Of a stretch of 64,000 nt of DNA, positions 24,054-50,759 are shown piece by piece. Position 1 is the stretch's first letter. Each line of letters starts with the position of its first letter. Position numbers and translations under genes: made by a program. Below the pieces are notes generated by a model. That model had not been told where the DNA came from, did no database searches, and worked only from the letters and a program-made list of their open reading frames with translations. The stretch is taken from NCBI RefSeq assembly GCF_026571515.1, contig NW_026851682.1, positions 186,001 to 250,000 on the forward strand, written 5' to 3'. This DNA is from Ruditapes philippinarum (Eukaryota).

Positions 24054-26097
24054 CCAGGACTTCTGGGCTTTTTAACTTGTTAATTTGTAAGTACTGGTGG
24101 CCTATAACTGGCTAATTTGTAAGAACTGGTGGGCTTTATCTGGTTAATTTGTAAGAACTGGTGGGTTTTAACTCATTAATTTGTAAGAACTGGTGGTATA
24201 TAATTGGCTAATTTGTAAGAACTGGTGGGCTTTATCTGGTAGATTTGTAAGAACTGGTGGACTATAACTGGCTAATTGGTAAGAACTGGCGGGTTTTATC
24301 TGGTTAATTTGTAGGAACTGGTGGCCTATAACTGGCTAATTTGTAGGAACTGGTGGGCTTTATCTGGTTAATTGTAAGAACTGGTGGGTTTTAAACTTAT
24401 TTATTTGTAAGAACTGGTTGCCTATAACTGGCTTATTTGTAAGAACTGGTGGGTTTTATCAGGTTAATTTGTAAGAACTGGTGGCCTATAACTGGCTAAT
24501 TTGTAAGAACTGGTGGGCTTTATCTGGTTAATTTGTAAGAACTGGTGGGTTTTAACTCATTAATTTGTAAGAACTGGTGGCCTATAATTGGCTTATTTGT
24601 AAGAACTGGTGGGCTCTATCTGGTAGATTTGTAAGAACTGGTGGACTATAACTGGCTAATTGGTAAGAACTGGTGGGTTTTAAACTTATTAACTTGTAAG
24701 AACTGGTGGCCTATAACTAGCTAATTTGTAAGAACTGGTGGGTTTTATCAGGTTAATTTGTAAGACCTGGTGGCCTATAAGTGGCTAATTTGTAAGAACT
24801 GGTGGGCTTTATCTGGTTAATTTGTAAGAACTGGTGGGTTTTAACTCATTAATTTGTAAGAACTGGTGGCCTATAACTGGCTAATTTGTAAGAAAAGGTG
24901 GGCTTTATCTGGTAGATTTGTAAGAACTAGTGGACTATAACTGGCTAATTTGTAAGAACTGGTGGGCTTTATCTGGTTAATTTGTAAGAACTGGTGGGTT
25001 TTAACTCATTAATTTGTAAGAACTGGTGGCCTATAATTGGCTAATTTGTAAGAACTGGTGGGCTTTATCTGGTAGATTTGTAAGAACTGGTGGACTATAA
25101 CTGGCTAATTGGTAAGAACTGGTGGGTTTTATCTGGTTAATTTGTAAGAACTGGTGGCCTATAACTGGCTAATTTGTAGGAACTGGTGGGCTTTATCTGG
25201 TTAAATGTAAGAACTGGTGGGTTTTAAACTTATTTATTTGTAAGAACTGGTGGCCTATAACTGGCTAATTTGTAAGAACTGGTGGGCTTTATCTGGTTAA
25301 TTTGTAAGAACTGGTGGGTTTTAACTCATTAATTTGTAAGAACTGGTGGCCTATAATTGGCTAATTTGTAAGAACTGGTGGGCTTTATCTGGTAGATTTG
25401 TAAGAACTGGTGGACTATAACTGGCTAATTTGTAAGAACTGGTGGGTTTTATCTGGTTAATTTGAAAGAACTGGTGGTCTTTAACTGGCTAATATGTAAG
25501 AACTGGTGGGTTTTATCTGGTTAATTTGTAAGTACTGGTGGCCTCTAACTGGCTAATTTGTAAGATCTGGTGGGCTTTATCTGGTTAATTTGTAAGAACT
25601 GGTGTGTTTTAACTGATAAGTTTGTAAGTCCTGGTGGGTTTTAACTGATTAATTTGTAAGAACTGGTGGACTATAGCTGGTTAATTTGTAAGAACTGGTG
25701 GACTATAACTGGTTTATTTGTAAGAACTGGTGGACTATAAATGGTGGACTATAACTGGTTAATTTGTAAGTACTGGTGGCCTATAACTGGTTAATTTGTA
25801 AAAACTAGTGGACTATAACTGAATAATTTGTAAGTACTGGTGGACTATAACTGGTTAATTTGTAAGTACTGGTGGATTATAACTGGTTAATTTGTAAGAA
25901 CTGGTGGACTATAACTGGTTAATTTGTAAGTACTGGTGGACTATAACTGAATAATTTGTAAGAACTTGTGGACTATAACTGGTTAATTTGTAAGTACTGG
26001 TGGACTAAAACTGGTTGATTTGTAAGTACTGGTGGGCCATAACTGGTTTATTTGTAAGTACTGGTGGACTATAACTGTTTAATTGTGTTAGTACTGA
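24054..26097. repeat. 32-bp satellite array with higher-order variant pattern
   Basis: Unit aatttgtaagaactggtgggctttatctggtt, period 32, about 63 units. Confidence 0.95.
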
Positions 26098-26410
26098 TAC
26101 GCTTTAAAGGGATTCCACTGAGATTTGTTGTCATGATGGGATTGGAAATATTTTTTTCTAGATTAATGATCCATTTGACAATAACTTGTATGCAAAATTT
26201 AGGATTATTCCCCACTCCGTTGTTCCAGAATGAAATACATGTATTCTAACTGTGAAAAATGACCCAAAACTGAAACGCTTTGCAATGTTTTGCTAAAAGT
26301 AGCACAAAAGTATGATTTTCAATTAATTTATGGGTATATTTCTTCATTATCTTTTGCGTGTCTTTTTAATTTAAGTGTCCCAGCTGATCTATGTAAGAAA
26401 TTCAAATGTC

Positions 26411-28270
26411 AATTTGTATGTACTGTTGGGCTATAACTGGTTAATTTATAGTACTGATGAGCTACTACTGGTAAATTCGTAAGTATTGGTGCGATATAAC
26501 TGGTTAATTTATAGTACTGATGGGCTACTACCGGTAAATTTGTACGTATTGGTGCGATATAACTGGTTAATTTATAGTACTGATGGGCTACTACCGGTAA
26601 ATTCGTACGTATTGGTGCGATATAACTGGTTAATTTATAGAACTGATGGGCTACTACCGGTAAATTCGTAAGTATTGGTGCGATATAACTGGTTAATTTA
26701 TAGTACTGATGGGCTACTACCGGTAAAATTCGTACGTATTGGTGCGATATAACTGGTTAATTTATAGTACTGATGGGCTACTACCGGTAAATTCGTAAGT
26801 ATTGGTGCGATATAACTGGTTAATTTATAGTACTGATGGGCTACTACTGGTAAATTCGTACGTATTGGTGCGATATAACTGGTTAATTTATAGTACTGAT
26901 GGGCTATTACTTGTAAATTCGTAAGTATTGGTGCGATATAACTGGTTAATTTATAGTACTGATGGGCTACTACTGGTAAATTCGTACGTATTGGTGCGAT
27001 ATAACTGGTTAATTTATAGTACTGATGAGCTACTACCGGTAAATTCGTACGTATTGGTGCGATATAACTGGTTAATTTATAGTACTGATGGGCTACTACC
27101 GGTAAATTCGTACGTATTGGTGCGATATAACTGGTTAATTTATAGTACTGATGGGCTACTACCGGTAAATTCGTACGTATTGGTGCGATATAACTGGTTA
27201 ATGTATAGTACTGATGGGCTACTACCGGTAAATTCGTAAGTATTGGTGCGATATAACTGGTTAATTTATAGTACTGATGGGCTACTACTGGTAAATTCGT
27301 ACGTATTGGTGCGATATAACTGGTTAATTTATAGTACTGATGAGCTACTACCGGTAAATTCGTAAGTATTGATGCGATATAACTGGTTAATTTATAGTAC
27401 TGATGGGCTACTACTGGTAAATTCGTAAATATTGGTGCGATATAACTGGTTAATTTTTAGTACTGATGAGCTGCTACCGGTAAATTCGTAAGTATTGGTG
27501 CGATATAACTGGTTAATTTATAGTACTGATGGGCTACTACCGGTAAATTCGTAAGTATTGGTGCAACATAACTGGTTAATTTATAGCACTGATGAGCTAC
27601 TACTGGTAAATTCGTAAATATTGGTGGGATATAACTGGTTAATTTATAGTACTGATGGGCTACTACTGGAAAGTTCGTAAGTATTGGTGCGATATAACTT
27701 GTTAATTTTTAGTACTGATGAGCTACTACCGGTAAATTCGTAAGTATTGATGCGATATAACTGGTTAATTTATAGTACTGATGGGCTACTACCGGTAAAT
27801 TCGTAAGTATTGGTGCGATATAACTGGTTAATTATAGTACTGATGGGCTACTACTGGTAAATTCGTAAGTATTGGTGTGATATAACTGGTTAATTTATAG
27901 TACTGATGGGCTACTACCGGTAAATTCGTACGTATTGGTGCGATATAACTGGTTAATTTATAGTACTGATGGGCTACTACCGGTAAATTCGTAAGTATTG
28001 GTGCGATATAACTGTTTAATTTATAGTACTGATGGGCTACTACCGGTAAATTCGTAAGTATTGGTGCGATATAACTGGTTAATTTATAGTACTGATGGGC
28101 TACTGCTGGTAAATTCGTAAGTATTGGTGCGATATAACTGTATAATTTTTAAGTACTGGTAGACTATAACTGGTTAACTTGTAAGTAATGGTGGGCTATC
28201 ACTTTTTTGTAAGTACTGGTACGCTTTAACTTGTTAATTTCTAGGAACTGTGGGTTATAACTGTTTAATT
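26411..28270. repeat. 63-bp dimeric (31+32) satellite array
   Basis: Unit attggtgcgatataactggttaatttatagtactgatgggctactaccggtaaattcgta(a/c)gt, about 27 units. Confidence 0.95.
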
Positions 28271-28327
28271 TGCAGTACTGTGGGGTTCATTTTTAGAAAT
28301 AGAGTGGTATATTGAATGTTCATGATA

Positions 28328-29612
28328 GTACTGTTTGGCTATTACTGGTTAATTTGTAAGTGCTGTTTGGCTGTAACATGTTTATTTGAAGTACTGGTGG
28401 GCTATAACATGTTTATTTAAAGTACTGGTGGACTATAACATGTTTATTTGAAGTACTGGTGGTCTATAACATGTTTATTTGAAGTACTGGTGGGCTATAA
28501 CATGTTTATTTGAAGTACTGGTGGGCTATAACATGTTTATTTGAAGTACTAGTGGGCTATTACATGTTTATTTAAAGTACTGGTGGGCTATAACATGTTT
28601 ATTGGAAATACTTGTGGGCTGTAACATGTTTATTTGAAGTATTGGTGGGCTATAACATGTTTATTTAAAGTACTGGTGGACTATAACATGTTTATTTGAA
28701 GTACTGGTGGGCTATAAGATGTTTATTTGAAGTACTGGTGGGCTATAACATGTTTATTTGAAGTACTGGTGGGCTATAAGATGTTTATTTGAAGTACTGG
28801 TGGGCTATAACATGTTTATTTGAAGTACTGGTGGGCTATAACATGTTTATTTAAAGTACTGGTGGGCTATAACATGTTTATTTGAAGTACTAGTGGGCTA
28901 TTACATGTTTATTTAAAGTACTGGTGGGCTATAACATGTTTATTGGAAATACTTGTGGGCTGTAACATGTTTATTTGAAAGTATTGGTGGGCTATAACAT
29001 GTTTATTTAAAGTACTGGTGGACTATAACATGTTTATTTGAAGTACTGGTGGGCTATAACATGTTTATTTGAAGTACTGGTGGGCTATAACATGTTTATG
29101 TGAAGTACTGGTGGGCTATAAGATGTTTATTTGAAGTACTGGTGGGCTATAACATGTTTATTTGAAGTACTGGTGGGCTATAACATGTTTATTTAAAGTA
29201 CTGGTGGGCTATAACATATTTATTTGAAGTACTGGTGGGCTATAAGATGTTTATTTGAAGTACTGGTGGGCTATAACATGTTTATTTGAAGTACTGGTGG
29301 GCTGTAACATGTTTATTTGAAGTACTGGTGGGCTATAACATGTTTATTTGAATTAATAGTGGGCTTTTACATGTTTATTGGAAGTACTTGTGGGCTGTAA
29401 CATGTTTATTTGAAGTATTGGTGGGCTATAACATATTTATTTGAAGTACTGGTGGGCTATAAGATGTTTATTTGAAGTACTGGTGGGGTATAACATGTTT
29501 ATTGGAAGTACTGGTGGGCTATAACATGTTTATTTGAAGTACTGGTGGGCTATAAGATGTTTATTTGAAGTACTGGTGGGCTATTACATGTTTATTAGAA
29601 GTACCAGTGAGC
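28328..29612. repeat. 31-bp satellite array
   Basis: Unit gtactggtgggctataacatgtttatttgaa, about 40 units. Confidence 0.95.
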
Positions 29613-42600: not shown

Positions 42601-45600
42601 TTTTTCATTTGAAACATGTTTAAATATTTGGCATATATGCTTTTTATCCAATTTTCTTTTTTTCCCACAAAAAATAAAAATTGATACATCTATATCCTGC
42701 ATATTAAGTAAAGGTATGCAACTCTCGGCTCATTTTTCAGCACACAAAGTCATCTTAATATGAACTCCGTAACTCCAACATTTTTTTACCAATTTTCAAA
42801 ATCTTTGTACCAAATGGTCGAGAATTGATAACTTTAAAAGGAAATAAAGCAGTTATTACAATCATTTCAAGTTATAAAAAGATATGTAATCTCCAATTCA
42901 CGCAAGTGTAGTAAGTTGACGGAGACTTGACCATGGTTTTTTGTCAAAATTACCTGACTAAACGGCAGTTTGTTCGAAATGAAGAATATTTTTTTGTATT
43001 GCACATTTAAAAATGATAGAATTTTATTATTATTTGTAATAACTGTTCAATCAAAATATATGAAACTATAACAAACCGTTTTTCTGATATGACAAATTGT
43101 CATGCAAGTAATGGTTCTGCAGAGTGCTCTCCCCTTTATTTTATTGTACAAAGTATTTTCATTGGTCTGTTTTCACACAACCAATGAAAATACTCCATAC
43201 AAATGCATCTGTTTATATTGAGAATTTGACAAATCTGAACAGTTACAAAACATTTTCTTTTTCAAAGTTTAATCCCCTCTTCCCCTGAAATGCATTGTGG
43301 TGATGTCTATTTCAGATGCATACATTTCTTTATATCTACAGCCCTGAAAATTGATGACATCGATCAATTGCTCTGTAAATATATATATCAAACTTGTAAT
43401 GAAGTTGTTTGCTTTCCTATGTTTATTAAGGTGACTGTCGGTTAATTTAATTGATGCAATAGATATGATTATAACTGGTATTGTTGTGACTTTATGTATC
43501 AACTAATAGCATGAATTTCAGTAAAAAACAGTAATTTTACTAGAGTGGAAAAGGATAACATGGGATATATAAAGACCACTTATGATGATAACTCACTGGC
43601 ATTGAATGTAAAATGAAACTACTTACATGCACTACCAGCTGATGTGGTTTTATATGTTGATTGAATTGAGTCACAAAAGTTTAAAATTTGATTTTGACAT
43701 TTTTACACCAAATTGATGATACTTGTAAGATATACTTCAATTTGGAATTGATAATGTAAAACTTAACATTTATTTAAACAAAAGCCCTAATTGCCTAAAG
43801 TGGACTAGATTTGGGAATTTTGTGTCATTTTGCAGAAAATAGGAATTTTTTCTGCCAATAGCAAAATTAATAGTCTACTTTGCTAGAAGCTTAAATAAAT
43901 TTAATATATTGTAATTGGTCTTTAGTGTAAAAAAAATGAGAGGGACTTAAAAAAAATAGGGGAAAACATTTGTTAATTGGGTAGGGCAATGTGCCAAAAT
44001 TAATTTAGGCTCCAAATTACCATGAAATTAGGGCTTTGTATACGTAATAAAAATATTAAAATTTCTTACATCACAACTTGTCTCTTTTCAGCCCATTCTC
44101 ATCGATGCCAGAGGGCATCTGATGGGAAGACTTGCAGCAATTGTGGCCAAGACTATACTGCAAGGTTTGTAAAATTCATTCATTGTTCTTGTACATAAAA
44201 TTTTGTCTTGATAAAATATTTTTTGAACACCATAATGTAATATTAACAAGTGTACTAATTTGTTTTACCGAAATACTTACGTGTAATAGCAATTTCGATT
44301 ATTTTATTTATTTTTGGTGATTAACTTATTGGAAACTAATTTGTATATTTAGGTCAGCGTGTTGTTATTGTACGATGTGAAGGTATCAACATTTCTGGAA
44401 ACTTCTACAGAAACAAATGTAAGTAATATCCAGTCAATAATTTCATTATTTTTATAGTCTTAAATTTCATTACTTTAGGAAAAAAAGTATGTCGATAAAT
44501 TTGAAAAAAAAAAGAAGAAACGATTTGATTCTATTTTGGGCAAAGTGGAATTTTTCTGACATTGGGACTTAGTAAATGCTTGCCTGTCTGAAGATTTTTG
44601 TCTTTGTACTTACACATTTATGTGGCAGATAAGCTTGAATTTATTTTGCTGTATAACTGTTGATATTCTTGAGTATTTGATACATGATTGTTTTATACCA
44701 CTTATGATGATAACTCACTGGAATTGATGCAGAAATGAAACTATTTACATGCACTACCAGCTGATGTGGTCTTCTTTTGTTTCCAAAATAAATGCAATTT
44801 GTATAGACACATTGCAAAATGCAACACTTGTTCTGTTTCAACTTCAATATTGTATATTATAATCTTACCACTTATGATGATAACTCACTGGAATTGATGC
44901 AGAAATGAAACTATTTACATGCACTACCAGCTGATGTGGTCTTCTTTTGTTTCCAAAATAAATGCAATTTGTATAGACACATTGCAAAATGCAACACTTG
45001 TTCTGTTTCAACTTCAATATTGTATATTACAACCTTACCACTTATGATGATTACTCACTGGAATTGATGCAGAAATGAAACTATTTACATGCACTACCAG
45101 CTGATGTGGTTTTCATTTCTTTCTTTACAAAATTAATGTAATTTGTATAGTCACATTACAAAATGCAACACTTGTTCTGTTTCAACTCCAATATTGTATA
45201 TTACAACCTTACCACTTATGATGATAACTCACTGGAATTGATGCAGAAATGAAACTATTTACATGCACTACCAGCTGATGTGGTCTTCTTTTGTTTCCAA
45301 AATAAATGTAATTTGTATAGACACATTGCAAAATGAAACACTTGTTCTGTTTCAACTTCAATATTGTATATTACAACCTTACCACTTATGATGATTACTC
45401 ACTGGAATTGATGCAGAAATGAAACTATTTACATGCACTACCAGCTGATGTGGTTTTCTTTGTTGTTCTTTTCTTTCCAAAATAAATGTAATTTATATAG
45501 TCACATTGCAAAATGCAACACTTTTTCTGTTTCAACTCCAATATTGTATATTACAACCTTACCACTTATGATGATAACTCACTGGAATTGATGCAGAAAT

Positions 45601-48600
45601 GAAACTATTTACATGCACTACCAGCTGATGTGGTTTTCTTTTTCTTTTATTGTTGCCAAAATGACAGTCAAATTTGCTTTGTTGAATTATGATACTTGAC
45701 ACTTGAACTGTTCGAATTTCAATAAAAATATATACTGTACTTATTCAAGTCAATATTGTATGTATAATATTTTGACCATGTATGATGATAAATCACTGGA
45801 ATTGATGCAGAAATGAAACTATTTACATGCACTACCAGCTGATGTGGTCATTTTTCATGTTACAAGAATTCCCCCAATATTAAACCTTTTGAAAGTTGTT
45901 GGATAAAAACTGCACAGGATGATAACTCACTGGTATTGAAAGCAAAATGAAATTAATCACATGCACTACCAGCTGATGTGGTTTTACTGTATAAAGTGTG
46001 CGGGAATATTCTTGTTTTGAAGTAATTGTCATTAATGTTGAAACACTTGTCATTAATGTTGTCATAATTGTTGAAATAATTGTCATAAATATTCAGATGA
46101 TTGATAAATATTCTTACATGTGTTTCAGTGAAGTACTTGAAGTATCTGAAATACAGATGTAATGTGAACCCGTCACGAGGACCCTTCCATTACCGTGCTC
46201 CTTCAAGAATCTTCTTCAAGGCCGTAAAGGGTAAGTTTACTCTCTAGTATATCATAGCACACAAATCTTTTGATAATGCTGGAATTGAAATGAATTGCTC
46301 CTTTTAATGTAGGATTATGCAAGCATTTTTCAAACGATTTTGCAATGCCTTGTTTAGTACCTCTAGATTTGATGTGAAAATATTTCATCTAAAGGTTAGT
46401 TTTAAATATATTGAAGGTCGATTGCAAGACAAGTTCTTGGGACTTGTATAATAATATATTTTACAGTCTGCTTCCTGGACCTAACCAGTATTGGTGTCAT
46501 CTGAGGAAACAGGGTCATGACCTATGTAGGGCACGAACCCATGATCCTTGGGTTGAGAGACAACCTAATCACTAGGCCACTGCACCTCCTCAATCAACTG
46601 TAGAAATGATACTGACTTGACACTTTGTTCTATCTGGTTATTAGTTTAGTACAAAAATTCTCAGTGCTTCTTTTTGTCATATCATGATCTTCTTTGTGTT
46701 TTATAGGAATGATCCCACACACCACAACTCGTGGTAAGGAAGCCCTTGGCCGTTTGAAGGTATTTGAGGGTGTCCCACCCCCATACGACAAACAGAAGAG
46801 GAAAGTAGTACCAGCAGCTCTCCGTATTCTCAGACTGAAACAAAACAGAAGGGTATGACTTGTTAAATCTGTTCAGTTATAGCTATTACAATGTATAGTA
46901 CTGTAAGTGTTTCAAACTTTGTACAAATGCTTAACTTTGATGACTTTATTAAATTTTTTGGCATAGTTTACTGCAGTAGGTGTAAAGTTTTTGAAAATAG
47001 CTCTTAATTAAAATTGTGGATCCATATTCTTTAGAATTTACGTAATATCTAGTACTTCCTGTGGATGCCCAATCTTTCATTGCTGAGTTTTGTAGAATCC
47101 TCCCTTTCATAATCGCTCTAAACCACAAAATGATAAATACTTGCTCCTCACCGCTGTGGGTTTGAATCCCGACAGGGACTTGGGATTCTTTCTTGTGAGG
47201 AAGGTATCAAGCTAGCTCGCAGAATGTTGGTGGCTCTACTCAGGTGCCCGTTTGTGCCTGAATTAATGCATGGAATTTCACCTGAGGTCTTCCTCCACAA
47301 GTAAAGCTGGAAAGTTGCCTATGACGTATTCTGTGTTTGTGCAACATAAACCCAAACTCTTACTTGAAATATAAAACTGAATCTTTGTGTCTCCTACAGT
47401 ACTGTGATTTGAACAGACTTGCCCATGAAGTTGGATGGAAATACCAAGGTGTTATTGGTACACTTGAGGCCAAGAGAAAAGTCAAGTCAAAGAAATTCTA
47501 CGAAAATAAAAAAGTTGCTGATGTAAGTATGGTAGTAAGGCTGGACAGGTTATACACTATGTAGACCATTTGTGATGATCATTTCCCGAACTTGATCTTA
47601 ACTGAAAAATAAAAATATTGATCTGAAGTGGTTTACATTTTACTTTGAAGTTATTTTACCTAGGAGAAAAAATCTAGTTCTATTCAATGTAGCTGTAAAA
47701 GTGAGCTTAGCTAGACAGTGTATTGATATATATATATAACATGCATGGATGGAGAGTTATCTTGGTTACCCAGGTGTCTGTTTAAACTCTTTGTACTACA
47801 TCAGTCAGGAGATATTCAAGCTTTAGTCTAGATTGCTATTATACAGGCAACTTGTGTAAATCATGCAAGTTTGCTATTTTTTACATGAAAGGGGATGTAC
47901 AGTATACATGATTACTTAATCGGTCTGTAAAGTATATACCTACAAGTTAATGGTGCTACCAAAAAAAACCCAAACTGTTTTTGTCAAACTTTCCAAATAT
48001 TTCAATAATTTGAATTTTCTATAATTTGAGTTCAAAATCCTGTAGGTCTTAAAATTGGTTTAGTCTGTCACTGCTAATGATGTTTATGTAATATTTGCTA
48101 CTCTTGATGTGAAATGATGTCAACATTACGCTGAAGCAGTAACAAACCATTTATATATTTCAAATTAGGTTATGTTAGGTTCCTTGTTGAAGAGGGAGGA
48201 GCTTCGGATTAGAAAAGCATCGACAAAGTGTATTTTGTCAGCGATAAAAGTTTGGTTGAAGGAAATAATCAATAAAATACATTTTCAGTTTCTATTTTTG
48301 CCAATGTTAATTATCACAATTAGGGATATCATGTTATCGGGTCAAAAATAAAGAGCCTAGTTAAACTGCACTTGTAGGAAAGGTTTGTCACTCCATTGCC
48401 ACAATTTAAATTTTAAAGAGGATGAATTTCGTTAAATTGTGGTAAAAACATGTCAAAATTGATCATCCTTTAAAAGCTTGGTTGTCTTTTGAGAATGTTT
48501 ATTTTTGGTTTATCCAAAATTTGATCAATTGGGGTGGGCTCTAGAAACAAATTGTATTATGTTAAGAAACCGTCTACATAAACCATTGGTGATGTTAATT

Positions 48601-50759
48601 TCCCGAACTTGAAACTTCGTGAAAACTCAATATTAGCTGAAATGGTTTATACTTTCATCTTTTTTGTCAGACATTAGTAAGAAGTGACAATGAATCTATG
48701 TCAAAAGAATACATTTTTTTTTACTGTCAAATGTCCGTTATTTTCGTTTGACTTTACGGAGTGGGGCTATCCTTCTCACCTGAGTGTCAGGGTAACAAAA
48801 GTTGAAGTTTTACATGCAAATTACTGTACTTCATCATATCTCATCAAGATCTTTGCCTGTAACTTCACATGCTTATAAGAAATCATGCTAGGTCAAGATC
48901 CAAGGTCCATAACTCGAGCATGACTTGACTGATTAATGGCCTTATGGCATTTTATGAAATTAGAAAAATTCCTGATTTAAACCTTGCATGCTACATCTGT
49001 CAGAAACAAATTGTATTATGTTAAGAAACAGTCTACATAAACCATTGGTGATGTTAATTTCCCGAACTTGAAACTTCGTGAAAACTCAATATTAGCTGAA
49101 ATGGTTTATACAGGGTTCGTACAGACCTGGAAAAGTCATGGAAAATCGTTTTTTTTTTGTGAAGAAATCATGGAAAACTCAGGGAATTCTGAAATTTGGT
49201 AATTTATCAGGGAATTTCACAAAATAATCATGGAATTTCTAATAAATATCCTTGAATTATTTAATTTGCAGAGTATTATTCGCTTAAAATAAAAATGTAC
49301 TATTTAACTATATGCGTCTACGTTATACGACAATGGCGTTTGAAATTGGGATTTAGTTGTGTTACACCTAGTTATATTTTTCTCACGGGTACAAATTGTT
49401 ACGACACCGGTTTGGTTACTTCCGTTTTCACGACCTTGCATTTTTAAATGCATTCTACTAAATAAATGAATGAAATCATTTTTATGTTTTTTCTTTACCA
49501 TTTTGAGGACTGGTGTTGTTAAACAGATGAAATTTGATATCATGGAAAACTGAAATTTGTCATGGAAAAATCATGGAATTTTAGGTCAGCAAGTCTGTAC
49601 GAACCCTGTTTATACTTTCATCTTTTTTGTCAGACATTAGTAAGAAGTGACAATGAATCTATGTCAAAAGAATACATTTTTTTTTACTGTCAAATGTCCG
49701 TTATTTTCGTTTGACTTTACGGAGTGGGGCTATCCTTCTCACCTGAGTGTCAGGGTAACAAAAGTTGAAGTTTTACATGCAAATTACTGTACTTCATCAT
49801 ATCTCATCAAGATCTTTGCCTGTAACTTCACATGCTTATAAGAAATCATGCTAGGTCAAGATCCAAGGTCCATAACTCGAGCATGACTTGACTGATTAAT
49901 GGCCTTATGGCATTTTGTGAAATTAGAAAAATTCCTGATTTAAACCTTGCATGCTACATCAGTCTTCAAAATTATTGAAGGTTTTTACATTAAACTTATA
50001 ATTGCTCTTGGGGGTCATATTAATAGGTCATAATCCATCACCCACTCATAACATGGATTTTGACAGTTTTTGAAGTTAGAAATTCTTGGTTCACTTGAGT
50101 ACGCCCTCATACTTATAGCTTTTTATCAGCTTATGTTTGTTTATTTTGAAAGGCAATTTTTATATGAAAACTGACATTTTCTCCTAACCAGGGCTATATA
50201 AAAATATTACCATGTATTTTATGAAATTGCTAGGATCATAGTATCTATGCCTTTTTCAATTGACCAAAATTTTAAGTAATTACAAGTCACTGCTAATGAT
50301 GTCATAACATAATATTTGCTACTCTTGATGTAGAATGATGTCAACAAACTCTGAAGCAATGACTTGTAAATAAGAAATCCTCTATAAAATATGAAATTAA
50401 ATGTTTTATATATTATGTATAACCTTTATGTATATGAACTTCAAGCATGGAAAGATATGACTGTGGAATTGAGATAATCCTGCTATATGTATATTCTATA
50501 CTAATAATATCTTGGTAGGACTTTTAGCCTGGCCTTGTTCTTAATTGGTTACTTAGACAATGTCATTATAGTTGCGAATGCTTGAGTGATGAGTATCTGA
50601 CACGAGTATAACAACTGTTCATGCAAAATACTAAAGATATCACACATGTAAAAATGTATATTATTGTATTTTCAGAACTTGAGAGCCAAGGCACGTCTTA
50701 ATGTTGCATCCAAGATTGCACAGTACCAGAAAGTGATCGAGGGTTACGGCTATAGATAA
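39610..50759 (+). CDS. RPL13A: 60S ribosomal protein L13a (uL13), 203 aa, 7 exons
   Basis: Exons 39610-39627, 44092-44164, 44353-44418, 46129-46230, 46707-46852, 47400-47522 and 50676-50759 total 612 nt, all GT-AG. Translation includes [57 protein letters not shown] and [16 protein letters not shown] at 50789. Confidence 0.98.
40201..42326. mobile_element. Non-autonomous Mutator-like element in RPL13A intron 1
   Basis: Imperfect TIRs of about 130 bp (ggaagaggctagccgtacgg / gtacggctagccactacc) and an exact 9-bp TSD taaaactaa at 40192-40200 and 42327-42335. Confidence 0.8.
40335..41525. mobile_element. Nested CAGGG-terminal TIR element with 6-bp TSD
   Basis: cagggttctc...gagaaccctg flanked by gtttat on both sides. 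Confidence 0.75.
43575..43648 (+). ncRNA. SNORD33: Box C/D snoRNA SNORD33 (U33)-like, RPL13A intron 1
   Basis: Terminal stem accac/gtggt, C box ATGATGA, D box CTGA preceded by CATGCACTACCA, which is antisense to 18S UGGUGGUGCAUG. The D+5 rule gives the equivalent of human Um1326. Confidence 0.88.
44697..44770 (+). ncRNA. SNORD33: SNORD33-like snoRNA, intron 3 array copy 1
   Basis: Intact C and D boxes, terminal stem and 18S guide. Confidence 0.88.
44867..44940 (+). ncRNA. SNORD33: SNORD33-like snoRNA, array copy 2
   Basis: Identical to copy 1, 170 bp downstream. Confidence 0.88.
45037..45110 (+). ncRNA. SNORD33: SNORD33-like snoRNA, array copy 3
   Basis: Intact boxes and guide; one substitution after the C box. 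Confidence 0.88.
45211..45284 (+). ncRNA. SNORD33: SNORD33-like snoRNA, array copy 4
   Basis: Intact boxes and guide. Confidence 0.88.
45381..45454 (+). ncRNA. SNORD33: SNORD33-like snoRNA, array copy 5
   Basis: Intact boxes and guide. Confidence 0.88.
45561..45634 (+). ncRNA. SNORD33: SNORD33-like snoRNA, array copy 6
   Basis: Intact boxes and guide. Confidence 0.88.
45773..45850 (+). ncRNA. SNORD33: SNORD33-like snoRNA, array copy 7
   Basis: Diverged flanks but intact boxes and guide, with its own stem tgaccat/gtggtca. Confidence 0.87.
45905..45986 (+). ncRNA. SNORD33: SNORD33-like snoRNA, array copy 8 (diverged)
   Basis: C box variant AGGATGA; guide CATGCACTACCA and CTGA are intact. 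Confidence 0.75.
46467..46582 (-). mobile_element. tRNA-derived SINE fragment
   Basis: Reverse strand shows an A box (tggcctagtga) and a B box (gggttcgtgccc); no tRNA cloverleaf. Confidence 0.6.
47139..47357 (+). mobile_element. 5'-degenerate tRNA-derived SINE (MetaSINE-like)
   Basis: B box gggtttgaatccc followed by gtgaggaagg..agctag..caggtgccc..tcttcctccac..aaagctggaaag, resembling recalled bivalve SINE bodies. Confidence 0.6.
47565..47632 (+). ncRNA. SNORD50: Box C/D snoRNA SNORD50-like, intron 6 copy 1
   Basis: Stem accatt/agtggt, C box GTGATGA, guide TTTCCCGAAC then D' TTGA, D box CTGA. Parallels recalled human U50 (GTGATGATCTTATCCCGAACCTGA); antisense to 28S CUUCGGGA(A/U)A. Confidence 0.78.
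48070..48140 (+). ncRNA. SNORD76: Box C/D snoRNA SNORD76-like, intron 6 copy 1
   Basis: Stem actgct/agcagt, C box ATGATGT, guide AATATTTGCTACT-C then D' TTGA, C' ATGATG, D box CTGA. Antisense to 28S AGUAGCAAAUAUU, in the register of U76 rather than U24. Confidence 0.8.
48582..48646 (+). ncRNA. SNORD50: SNORD50-like snoRNA copy 2
   Basis: Stem ataaaccatt/aatggtttat, C box GTGATGT, TTTCCCGAAC-TTGA, D box CTGA. Confidence 0.75.
49041..49105 (+). ncRNA. SNORD50: SNORD50-like snoRNA copy 3
   Basis: Identical to copy 2, within the tandem duplication. Confidence 0.75.
49111..49608. mobile_element. 498-bp MITE with CAGGG termini and 6-bp TSD
   Basis: cagggttcgtacagac...gtctgtacgaaccctg with TSD tttata; the empty site is visible at about 48646-48651. 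Confidence 0.92.
50281..50368 (+). ncRNA. SNORD76: SNORD76-like snoRNA copy 2
   Basis: 14-bp terminal stem with one mismatch (tacaagtcactgct/agcaatgacttgta); same boxes and guide AATATTTGCTACTCTTGA as copy 1, diverged elsewhere. Confidence 0.8.

What the first reader, a model, noticed from the sequence alone, without database searches (positions are those of the whole stretch)
44697..45986. A satellite-like array in RPL13A intron 3 is eight tandem SNORD33 snoRNA genes
Seen: units of 170-180 bp, each with a 74-nt core holding a terminal stem, C box, D'/C' boxes, 18S guide and D box. The first six cores differ at about one position while spacers collect indels. Copies 7, 8 and the intron 1 copy have diverged flanks but keep boxes and guide. 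Copies 3 and 5 share the variant gattactc, suggesting amplification of a two-unit block. Known: vertebrate intronic snoRNAs are normally one per intron and released by exonucleolytic trimming; polycistronic intronic clusters are typical of plants and some insects. Inference: eight copies in one intron need endonucleolytic separation or cryptic splicing, or they yield a long RNA capped by snoRNPs at both ends; nine copies for one methylation site suggests dosage amplification or a second function.
Basis: partly seen in the sequence, partly recalled or inferred. Interest (0 to 1): 0.8.

Follow-up and report, generated by a model that had tools for sequence, protein, structure and literature searches.

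The report
Eight tandem SNORD33-like snoRNAs, clam RPL13A
One intron of a clam's only RPL13A ribosomal-protein gene holds eight head-to-tail copies of a small RNA that guides one methylation of 18S ribosomal RNA; the copies are kept intact by selection, an arrangement rare in animals but already known from flies and rice.

Summary
Intron 3 (44419-46128) of an intact, single-copy RPL13A gene carries eight 74-nt box C/D units. Six lie in a 170-180 bp array and two more lie behind it with unrelated flanks. A ninth sits in intron 1.

All nine hit Rfam SNORD33/32 end to end, but below the curated cut-off (34-39 bits against 44). All keep a 12-bp antisense to the clam's own 18S. The box D rule places the methylated base on the U equivalent to human 18S-U1326, the SNORD33 site.

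Cores vary far less than spacers (1 of 74 sites against 14 of 96, p=0.002). Changes in the older copies avoid the boxes, guide and stem. Core and spacer occur nowhere else in the 1.4-Gb assembly.

The genome is a clam's, so the vertebrate rule is not the right yardstick. Intron 6 of the same gene holds five more snoRNAs.

My reading is a lineage-specific tandem amplification of a working SNORD33 orthologue. How the inner copies are released is untested: endonuclease cuts, snoRNA-ended long RNAs or cryptic splicing. The one RNA run was uninformative, and short-read contigs collapse the internal copy number.

It is a new variant of a known kind, the intronic snoRNA gene cluster.

The parts
43419..43430 (+). 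RPL13A exon 1 coding part (ATG..AAG), preceded by a CTTTCC oligopyrimidine start typical of ribosomal-protein genes
   Evidence: Read from the sequence. GT donor at 43431. The phase fits exon 2.
43575..43648 (+). Ninth SNORD33-like box C/D copy, alone in intron 1 (43431-44091)
   Evidence: Rfam RF00133 39.1 bits, E 2.4e-4, model 1-85. It differs from core 1 at 7 of 74 positions, mostly in the D'-C' loop.
44092..44164 (+). RPL13A exon 2
   Evidence: Translation [28 protein letters not shown] borders.
44353..44418 (+). RPL13A exon 3
   Evidence: Translation [25 protein letters not shown] borders.
44419..46128 (+). Intron 3 (1710 nt) holding the eight copies. Copy 1 starts 278 nt after the 5' splice site; copy 8 ends 146 nt before the 3' splice site.
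44697..44770 (+). Copy 1 (type A core)
   Evidence: RF00133 36.9 bits. The left junction is bridged by contigs of runs X1 and X6 (records 5 and 20).
44867..44940 (+). Copy 2 (type A core, identical to copy 1)
   Evidence: RF00133 36.9 bits.
45037..45110 (+). Copy 3 (type B core, A>T at core position 16)
   Evidence: RF00133 36.6 bits.
45211..45284 (+). Copy 4 (type A core)
   Evidence: RF00133 36.9 bits.
45381..45454 (+). Copy 5 (type B core)
   Evidence: RF00133 36.6 bits.
45561..45634 (+). Copy 6 (type A core, followed by a 140-nt largely unrelated spacer)
   Evidence: RF00133 36.9 bits. A contig of X3 runs from its 3' end through the unique spacer into copy 7 (record 11).
45775..45848 (+). 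Copy 7. It has three changes; one turns a stem C-G into U-G, so the stem is kept.
   Evidence: RF00133 36.4 bits.
45909..45982 (+). Copy 8, the most diverged (14 of 74). Box C reads AGGAUGA and the 5' stem is rebuilt as CACA/UGUG. The guide, box D and C'/D' are intact.
   Evidence: RF00133 34.1 bits. Contigs of X1, X3 and X6 cover it (records 6, 12, 21).
44867..45560 (+). Two copies of a two-unit (A-B) higher-order block, 344 and 350 nt
   Evidence: TRF period 344, 95% matches, score 1689 against 1628 for period 170. Spacer distances are A-A 2-4% and A-B 7-11%.
46129..46230 (+). RPL13A exon 4
   Evidence: Translation [33 protein letters not shown].
46707..46852 (+). RPL13A exon 5
   Evidence: The 48-aa peptide has a single match in the whole genome and hits many L13a-like proteins.
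47400..47522 (+). RPL13A exon 6
50676..50759 (+). RPL13A exon 7 with stop codon. The seven exons sum to 606 nt (201 codons plus stop).
   Evidence: The phases were checked by hand and the exons were never joined.

Best explanation
This is a lineage-specific tandem amplification of the clam's SNORD33 orthologue inside intron 3 of its only RPL13A gene. SNORD33 is a box C/D guide RNA for 2'-O-methylation of the 18S U equivalent to human U1326.

Unequal crossing-over built the array in several rounds. Copies 7 and 8 are old. An A/B pair then formed, the two-unit block was duplicated, and a single-unit duplication came very recently.

The 74-nt cores are held by purifying selection, so most copies are probably assembled into snoRNPs on the RPL13A pre-mRNA or excised intron.

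All eight share one intron, so trimming from the two intron ends can free only the outermost ends. Inner copies must be separated by endonucleolytic cuts in the U-rich spacers, followed by trimming to the snoRNP-protected ends. That matches the intronic snoRNA gene clusters of rice and Drosophila. Multimeric snoRNA-ended RNAs are the expected intermediates or by-products.

Shown here: the anatomy, the target pairing, the constraint on the cores, the uniqueness in the genome and the single-copy host gene. Inferred: expression, the mode of release and a dosage benefit.
For: - Nine full-length hits to Rfam SNORD33/32, E 2e-4 to 4e-3 in a 9-kb search.
- These nine are the only exact guide+D matches in 1.4 Gb. 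The spacer occurs only in the array.
- The guide CAUGCACUACCA pairs over 12 bp (one G-U) with UGGUGGUGCAUG of the clam's own 18S copy. The fifth base upstream of CUGA lies opposite the U two bases before GGUGCAUGG. The register is the same as in the Rfam consensus. SNORD33 guides 18S-U1326 and is hosted by RPL13A in mammals (PMC6466398, PMC4234469).
- Cores show 1 variable site of 74 against 14 of 96 in the spacers, Fisher p=0.002.
- In copies 7, 8 and the intron 1 copy the flanks cannot be aligned. Their core changes sit mostly in the D'-C' loop, the unpaired stretch 5' of the guide and, in copy 8, the 5' stem.
- The host gene is intact (606 nt, GT-AG introns) and single-copy.
- Contigs from three separate studies cover both array borders and copies 7 and 8. 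They also show the type B variant.
- Intron 6 of the same gene holds five more snoRNAs, so multi-snoRNA introns are not a one-off here.
Against: - No copy reaches the Rfam gathering score of 44 bits.
- There is no RNA evidence. The one raw-read RNA run gave almost no depth even on the RPL13A exons, so it says nothing either way.
- The internal copy number is not confirmed independently, because short-read contigs collapse the identical cores.
- The spacer has no significant structure that would mark an RNase III site (z -0.9).
- Units 1, 2 and 4 are so young (2-4% spacer divergence) that their intact cores say little on their own.
- Copy 8 has G in place of the conserved U of box C and may be weak or dead.
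Confidence: 0.62

Rival explanations
1. snoRNA-ended long RNA. Exonucleases trim the excised intron only as far as copy 1 and copy 8. This leaves a stable RNA of about 1.29 kb (44697-45982), or a ladder of multimers, that carries snoRNPs along its length. The inner copies act mainly as part of that RNA and not as free guides.
For: In mammals, two snoRNAs in one intron are the stated prerequisite for sno-lncRNAs. One such RNA forms in mouse Rpl13a with SNORD33 and SNORD34 at its ends (PMC4234469; reviews PMC11028025, PMC10557570). A few 150-nt RNA reads lie on the array and must span core plus spacer.
Against: The read count is tiny and intron 5 shows similar depth. The spacers drift freely, so no function sits in them. 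Selection on every inner core is easier to explain if each makes a guide RNA.
Confidence: 0.17
2. Each unit is spliced on its own. Cryptic exons in the spacers give every snoRNA its own small intron, as in the SNORD115/116 arrays, and the extra exons are then removed or the transcripts decay.
For: Each array spacer contains an acceptor-like tttgtatag followed about 45 nt later by a donor-like gtatatta (read).
Against: Both sites are weak next to the gene's real ones. The core would lie only about 36 nt before the putative acceptor. No joints were seen in the array, though RNA depth was near zero. Including such exons would break the RPL13A reading frame.
Confidence: 0.08
3. Neutral, recent amplification. 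One or two copies work, and the rest are young passengers kept alike by recency or gene conversion.
For: Units 1, 2 and 4 differ by only 2-4% in their spacers. Depth in the array differs between individuals, which hints at copy-number change. Copy 8 has a flawed box C.
Against: The core/spacer contrast holds between the A and B types, whose spacers differ by 7-11% but whose cores differ by 1 of 74. Copies 7, 8 and the intron 1 copy have saturated flanks yet intact boxes and guide. Conversion tracts would not be expected to stop at the stem ends.
Confidence: 0.1
4. Assembly artefact: the array is an over-expanded repeat.
For: No long read or single contig spanning the array was available.
Against: The units are distinguishable by spacer indels and substitutions. 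Both borders, copies 7 and 8 and the type B variant are present in other samples, and array depth is raised in them, not lowered.
Confidence: 0.03

Closest known systems
Mammalian SNORD33 (U33) in RPL13A
   Same: Box C/D architecture. The same 3' guide in the same register, pointing to the 18S U equivalent to U1326. The same host gene (PMC6466398, PMC4234469).
   Different: Mammals have one copy per intron. The clam has eight in intron 3 and one in intron 1. The 5' half (D' guide region) differs, and Rfam scores stay below the cut-off.
Intronic snoRNA gene clusters of rice and Drosophila
   Same: Several snoRNA genes on the sense strand of a single host intron (organisation named in PMC2780460, citing Liang 2002 and Huang 2004/2005).
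   Different: This is a near-identical homomeric tandem array with a higher-order repeat, in a mollusc ribosomal-protein gene. I found no mollusc report. Processing of those clusters could not be read here because the papers are not held.
sno-lncRNAs, including the mouse Rpl13a SNORD33-SNORD34 RNA
   Same: More than one snoRNA in one excised intron, in the same host gene family (PMC4234469).
   Different: Here the arrangement is constitutive, not produced by exon skipping. There are eight snoRNAs, not two, and no RNA product has been shown.
SNORD115/SNORD116 tandem arrays
   Same: Tandem repeat units each carrying one box C/D snoRNA, and evolution by unit and block duplication (PMC3413130, PMC11028025).
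   Different: Those units each have their own exons and intron in a non-coding host, and they are orphan guides. Here all units share one intron of a coding gene and keep a canonical rRNA guide.

Membership tests
Box C/D snoRNA | Box C (RUGAUGA) near the 5' end and box D (CUGA) near the 3' end | tested here: met
   AUGAUGA and CUGA in eight of nine copies. Copy 8 has AGGAUGA.
Box C/D snoRNA | Short terminal stem bringing C and D together | tested here: met
   ACCAC/GUGGU. Copy 7 keeps it with U-G; copy 8 uses CACA/UGUG.
Box C/D snoRNA | At least 10 nt of antisense to rRNA ending next to box D, with the target base opposite the fifth nucleotide upstream | tested here: met
   12 bp including one G-U against an 18S copy of the same genome.
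Box C/D snoRNA | Accumulates as a ~70-nt RNA bound by the core snoRNP proteins | tested here: inconclusive
   The only raw-read RNA run had almost no depth across the whole gene, and it was a standard cDNA library, not small RNA.
Rfam RF00133 (Z195/SNORD33/SNORD32) | Score at or above the gathering cut-off of 44 bits | tested here: not met
   34.1-39.1 bits, E 2.4e-4 to 4e-3, full model length.
Rfam RF00133 (Z195/SNORD33/SNORD32) | Guide for 18S-U1326 (SNORD33), as opposed to 18S-G1328 plus 28S-A1511 (SNORD32) | tested here: met
   The register gives the U1326 equivalent in all nine copies (sites from PMC6466398). The 5' guide does not match the CACCAU type seen in metagenome homologues. Its target could not be tested because no 28S was recoverable.
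Rfam RF00133 (Z195/SNORD33/SNORD32) | Hosted in an RPL13A intron | tested here: met
   Exon model and single-copy gene. Two metagenome eukaryotes also carry the snoRNA between RPL13A exons.
Intronic snoRNA gene cluster | Two or more snoRNA genes, sense strand, within one intron of a host gene | tested here: met
   Eight in intron 3 and five in intron 6.
Intronic snoRNA gene cluster | Individual snoRNAs released from the common intron | not testable with these tools
   Needs small-RNA data or Northern blots. The read tool's single call is spent.
sno-lncRNA | Stable intron-derived RNA with snoRNA ends | tested here: inconclusive
   The prerequisite is met (more than one snoRNA per intron). Only a handful of reads lie on the array.
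SNORD115/116-type array | Each repeat unit has its own exon(s), so each snoRNA has its own intron | tested here: inconclusive
   Weak splice-like motifs lie in the spacers. No joints were seen, but depth was near zero.

The most novel reading that the evidence does not exclude
The array is a copy-number-variable module. Its excised intron persists as a multi-snoRNP RNA or a ladder of multimers, 'beads on a string' of up to 1.3 kb. That RNA would act beyond 18S methylation, for example as a sink for snoRNP proteins or a regulator tied to RPL13A output. This would be an invertebrate, constitutive counterpart of the mammalian Rpl13a sno-lncRNA.
Probability: 0.15. Interest if true: 0.65.

Novelty: new variant of a known kind. 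Interest (0 to 1): 0.42.

Why it matters
Animal snoRNAs mostly follow a rule of one per intron, because release depends on exonucleases trimming the excised intron (PMC11028025). A selected eight-copy homomeric array in a very highly expressed, single-copy gene is a natural test case. It can show how animals separate snoRNAs that share an intron, and whether snoRNA dosage can be tuned by tandem copy number.

The copy-specific variants (type A, type B, copy 7, copy 8, intron 1) make each copy's output readable in small-RNA data.

The finding also extends the SNORD33-RPL13A association, known in mammals, to a mollusc.

Tried and rejected
- **Rfam at gathering threshold:** no hit in the window. 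The E-value mode was needed.
- **D' guide target:** I scanned the available rRNA loci for pairing with UAACUCACUGGAA and found nothing convincing. The assembly gave only fragmentary 18S, 28S and isolated 5.8S copies, so the 28S could not be tested.
- **RNase III-type hairpin in the spacer:** the fold is not better than shuffles.
- **Independent promoter:** there is a TATA-like run only 10-20 nt upstream, too close to act as one. I rejected this on reading the sequence alone.
- **Dispersed satellite or mobile element:** rejected, because core and spacer are confined to this locus.
- **Other molluscs:** the exact clam pattern found nothing in metagenome contigs. A looser pattern gave 118+ contigs from assorted eukaryotes, written to exclude the T of the Rfam consensus at the one open position so as to avoid vertebrate-type, possibly human, sequence. 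Only two of these contigs carry RPL13A exons, each with one snoRNA per intron.
- **Spliced model:** it was searched exon by exon.
- **Literature:** two Drosophila and rice papers on intronic clusters are not held.
Full report
**What is there**

The window is a stretch of a 1.4-Gb clam assembly. RPL13A runs on the + strand from about 43.4 to 50.8 kb. I read seven coding exons:
- 43419-43430
- 44092-44164
- 44353-44418
- 46129-46230
- 46707-46852
- 47400-47522
- 50676-50759

All introns are GT-AG. The exon lengths sum to 606 nt, and the phases fit from exon to exon. I checked phases by length and by single-exon translations and did not join the exons. The exon 5 peptide matches one place only in the whole genome, so this is the animal's only RPL13A gene.

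Intron 3 is 44419-46128. The finding's coordinates, 44697-45986, lie wholly inside it.

**The array**

TRF reports 44696-45642 with period 170 (5.5 copies, 92%) and with period 344 (2.7 copies, 95%, higher score).

Eight 74-nt cores start at 44697, 44867, 45037, 45211, 45381, 45561, 45775 and 45909. A ninth starts at 43575 in intron 1.
- Cores 1, 2, 4 and 6 are identical.
- Cores 3 and 5 share A>T at core position 16.
- Core 7 differs at 3 positions, core 8 at 14 and the intron 1 copy at 7.

Each core reads, in order:
- 5' stem ACCAC
- box C AUGAUGA
- a 13-nt stretch
- UUGA (D')
- a 6-nt loop
- AUGAAA-type C'
- a spacer
- CAUGCACUACCA, then G
- box D CUGA
- 3' stem GUGGU

The same layout appears in homologues from other eukaryotes found in metagenome contigs.

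Copy 8 has AGGAUGA in place of AUGAUGA and a shifted stem. From general knowledge of the C/D kink-turn, the U at that box C position is strongly conserved, so copy 8 may be impaired.

**Family**

At Rfam's curated thresholds nothing in the window scores. In the E-value search all nine align over the full SNORD33/SNORD32 model at 34.1-39.1 bits (cut-off 44), with E 2.4e-4 to 4e-3. The whole-genome search returns the same nine plus one weak unrelated hit.

The loss of score comes from the 5' half. The 3' guide, box D and stem match the consensus.

The exact guide plus box D occurs only at these nine places in 1.4 Gb. The spacer occurs only in the array. So this is a local amplification, not a dispersed repeat.

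**Target**

An 18S copy from the same genome contains GGGUGGUGGUGCAUGGCC. The guide pairs with UGGUGGUGCAUG over 12 bp with one G-U. The fifth nucleotide upstream of CUGA faces the middle U, two bases before GGUGCAUGG.

The Rfam consensus has the same register. Tables list SNORD33 as the guide for human 18S-U1326, SNORD32 for 18S-G1328 and 28S-A1511, and RPL13A as host (PMC6466398; PMC4234469). The equivalence of the clam U to U1326 rests on that conserved sequence context and on my knowledge of the human numbering.

All nine copies have the SNORD33 register.

The 5' guide region keeps UCACUGG in all nine, but it differs from the CACCAU type of the metagenome homologues. I found no target for it. 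A usable 28S could not be recovered.

**Constraint**

Among units 1-5 the cores have 1 variable column of 74. The spacers have 14 of 96 plus 10 indel columns, Fisher p=0.002.

Type A and type B spacers differ by 7-11% while their cores differ by one base. A-A spacers differ by 2-4%.

Around copies 7, 8 and the intron 1 copy the flanks no longer align. Most of their core changes fall in the D'-C' loop and the unpaired stretch 5' of the guide. Copy 7's changes lie in the 5' stem (one pair kept as U-G) and the 5' guide stretch, and copy 8 also changes its 5' stem and box C.

This is the pattern expected of working box C/D genes. It is hard to get from recency or gene conversion alone.

The history that fits is:
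1. Old duplications gave the intron 1 copy, copy 8 and copy 7.
2. An A/B pair formed.
3. The two-unit block was duplicated.
4. A single-unit duplication (units 1 and 2) came very recently.

**Reads**

One call was allowed.

Contigs from three DNA studies cover both borders of the array, the unique spacer between copies 6 and 7, and copies 7 and 8. They also carry the type B base. One of these samples may be the source of the assembly.

Inside the array the short-read contigs collapse, so the unit count is not independently confirmed. Summed word depth in the array bins reaches about 3-6 times the flanking level. Averaged over the array it exceeds the flanks in two runs. That fits many copies, and perhaps copy-number differences, but it is not a measurement.

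The raw-read RNA run gave essentially no depth on any RPL13A exon. For a ribosomal-protein gene that means the run or its filtering was uninformative. A few reads lie on the array and a few on intron 5. I draw nothing from it.

Six RNA runs labelled mollusc metagenome hold 8-12% of the query's words. That is about the exon share of the query, but I could not lay them.

**How it works**

In animals, excised introns are debranched and trimmed by exonucleases up to the snoRNP, which is why one snoRNA per intron is the norm (PMC11028025, PMC10557570). With two snoRNAs in an intron, the same steps give snoRNA-ended long RNAs. One example forms in mouse Rpl13a when SNORD33 and SNORD34 fall into one intron (PMC4234469).

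Eight selected copies therefore imply a further step that separates them. [quoted passage not shown] This is inference.

The spacer shows no significant fold. All nine cores are followed within 12 nt by a run of four or more T, against 13% of intron windows. This was noticed after the fact and is unexplained.

So this clam evidently tolerates multi-snoRNA introns.

**Comparison and verdict**

Its family assignment is right by guide and host gene, though not by the Rfam cut-off.

Its surprise was measured against vertebrates, but this is a mollusc. In two other eukaryotes with RPL13A exons on the contig, the snoRNA sits one per intron, so the clam array is derived.

I found no paper on mollusc snoRNA organisation. 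The route to other mollusc loci was closed.

I class it as a new variant of a known kind, of moderate interest. It would become more interesting if RNA data showed multimeric snoRNP RNAs or copy-number-linked dosage.

Noticed in passing
window 47567-47629, 48072-48138, 48584-48643, 49043-49102, 50291-50358: Intron 6 of RPL13A holds five more box C/D candidates on the + strand. Three are SNORD50-like (34.2, 24.4 and 24.4 bits) and two are SNORD24-like (35.3 and 39 bits). All are below the Rfam cut-offs.
   Followed up: partly
window 49111-49608: A roughly 500-bp insert has 15-nt terminal inverted repeats (CAGGGTTCGTACAGAC / GTCTGTACGAACCCTG). It is flanked by a duplicated GTTTATAC and lies a few bases after the snoRNA at 49043-49102. 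It looks like a small non-autonomous DNA transposon inside one arm of a segmental duplication (about 48.55-48.99 kb against 49.0-49.96 kb).
   Followed up: partly
window 47122-47415 and 46387-46680: Very high-copy repeats in introns 5 and 4. Summed word depth is 30,000-275,000 against a baseline of 5-60 in three DNA runs. Hundreds of RNA reads run on into unlike sequence, so these are SINE-like dispersed elements.
   Followed up: no
window 24070-29604: A 5.5-kb minisatellite of 31-32 bp units with higher-order periods of 63 and 96 and a strong G-over-C skew (0.27-0.41).
   Followed up: no
window 43648, 44770 ... 45982 (3' ends of all nine cores): Every core is followed within 12 nt by a run of four or more T. 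Only 13% of 12-nt intron windows here have one. This may bear on 3' processing. It was noticed after the fact.
   Followed up: partly
G000 contigs C8048, C7645, C8036, C815, C13473, C5783: Only fragmentary 18S and 28S and isolated 5.8S copies were found, and no complete rDNA unit. Either the rDNA arrays are missing from the assembly or these are dispersed rDNA fragments.
   Followed up: partly
L037 (metagenome contig Ga0209780_1006456): Three SNORD33-type snoRNAs lie within 4 kb on one strand in an unidentified eukaryote, with no RPL13A exon detected on the contig. L042 has two near-identical copies 234 bp apart with an exon-like piece between them.
   Followed up: partly
window 43300-47700, RNA run X24: A 48-gigabase RNA-seq run labelled with the same species gave almost no reads on any exon of the only RPL13A gene. 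Likely causes are the tool's filter for conserved genes or a mislabelled or divergent sample.
   Followed up: no
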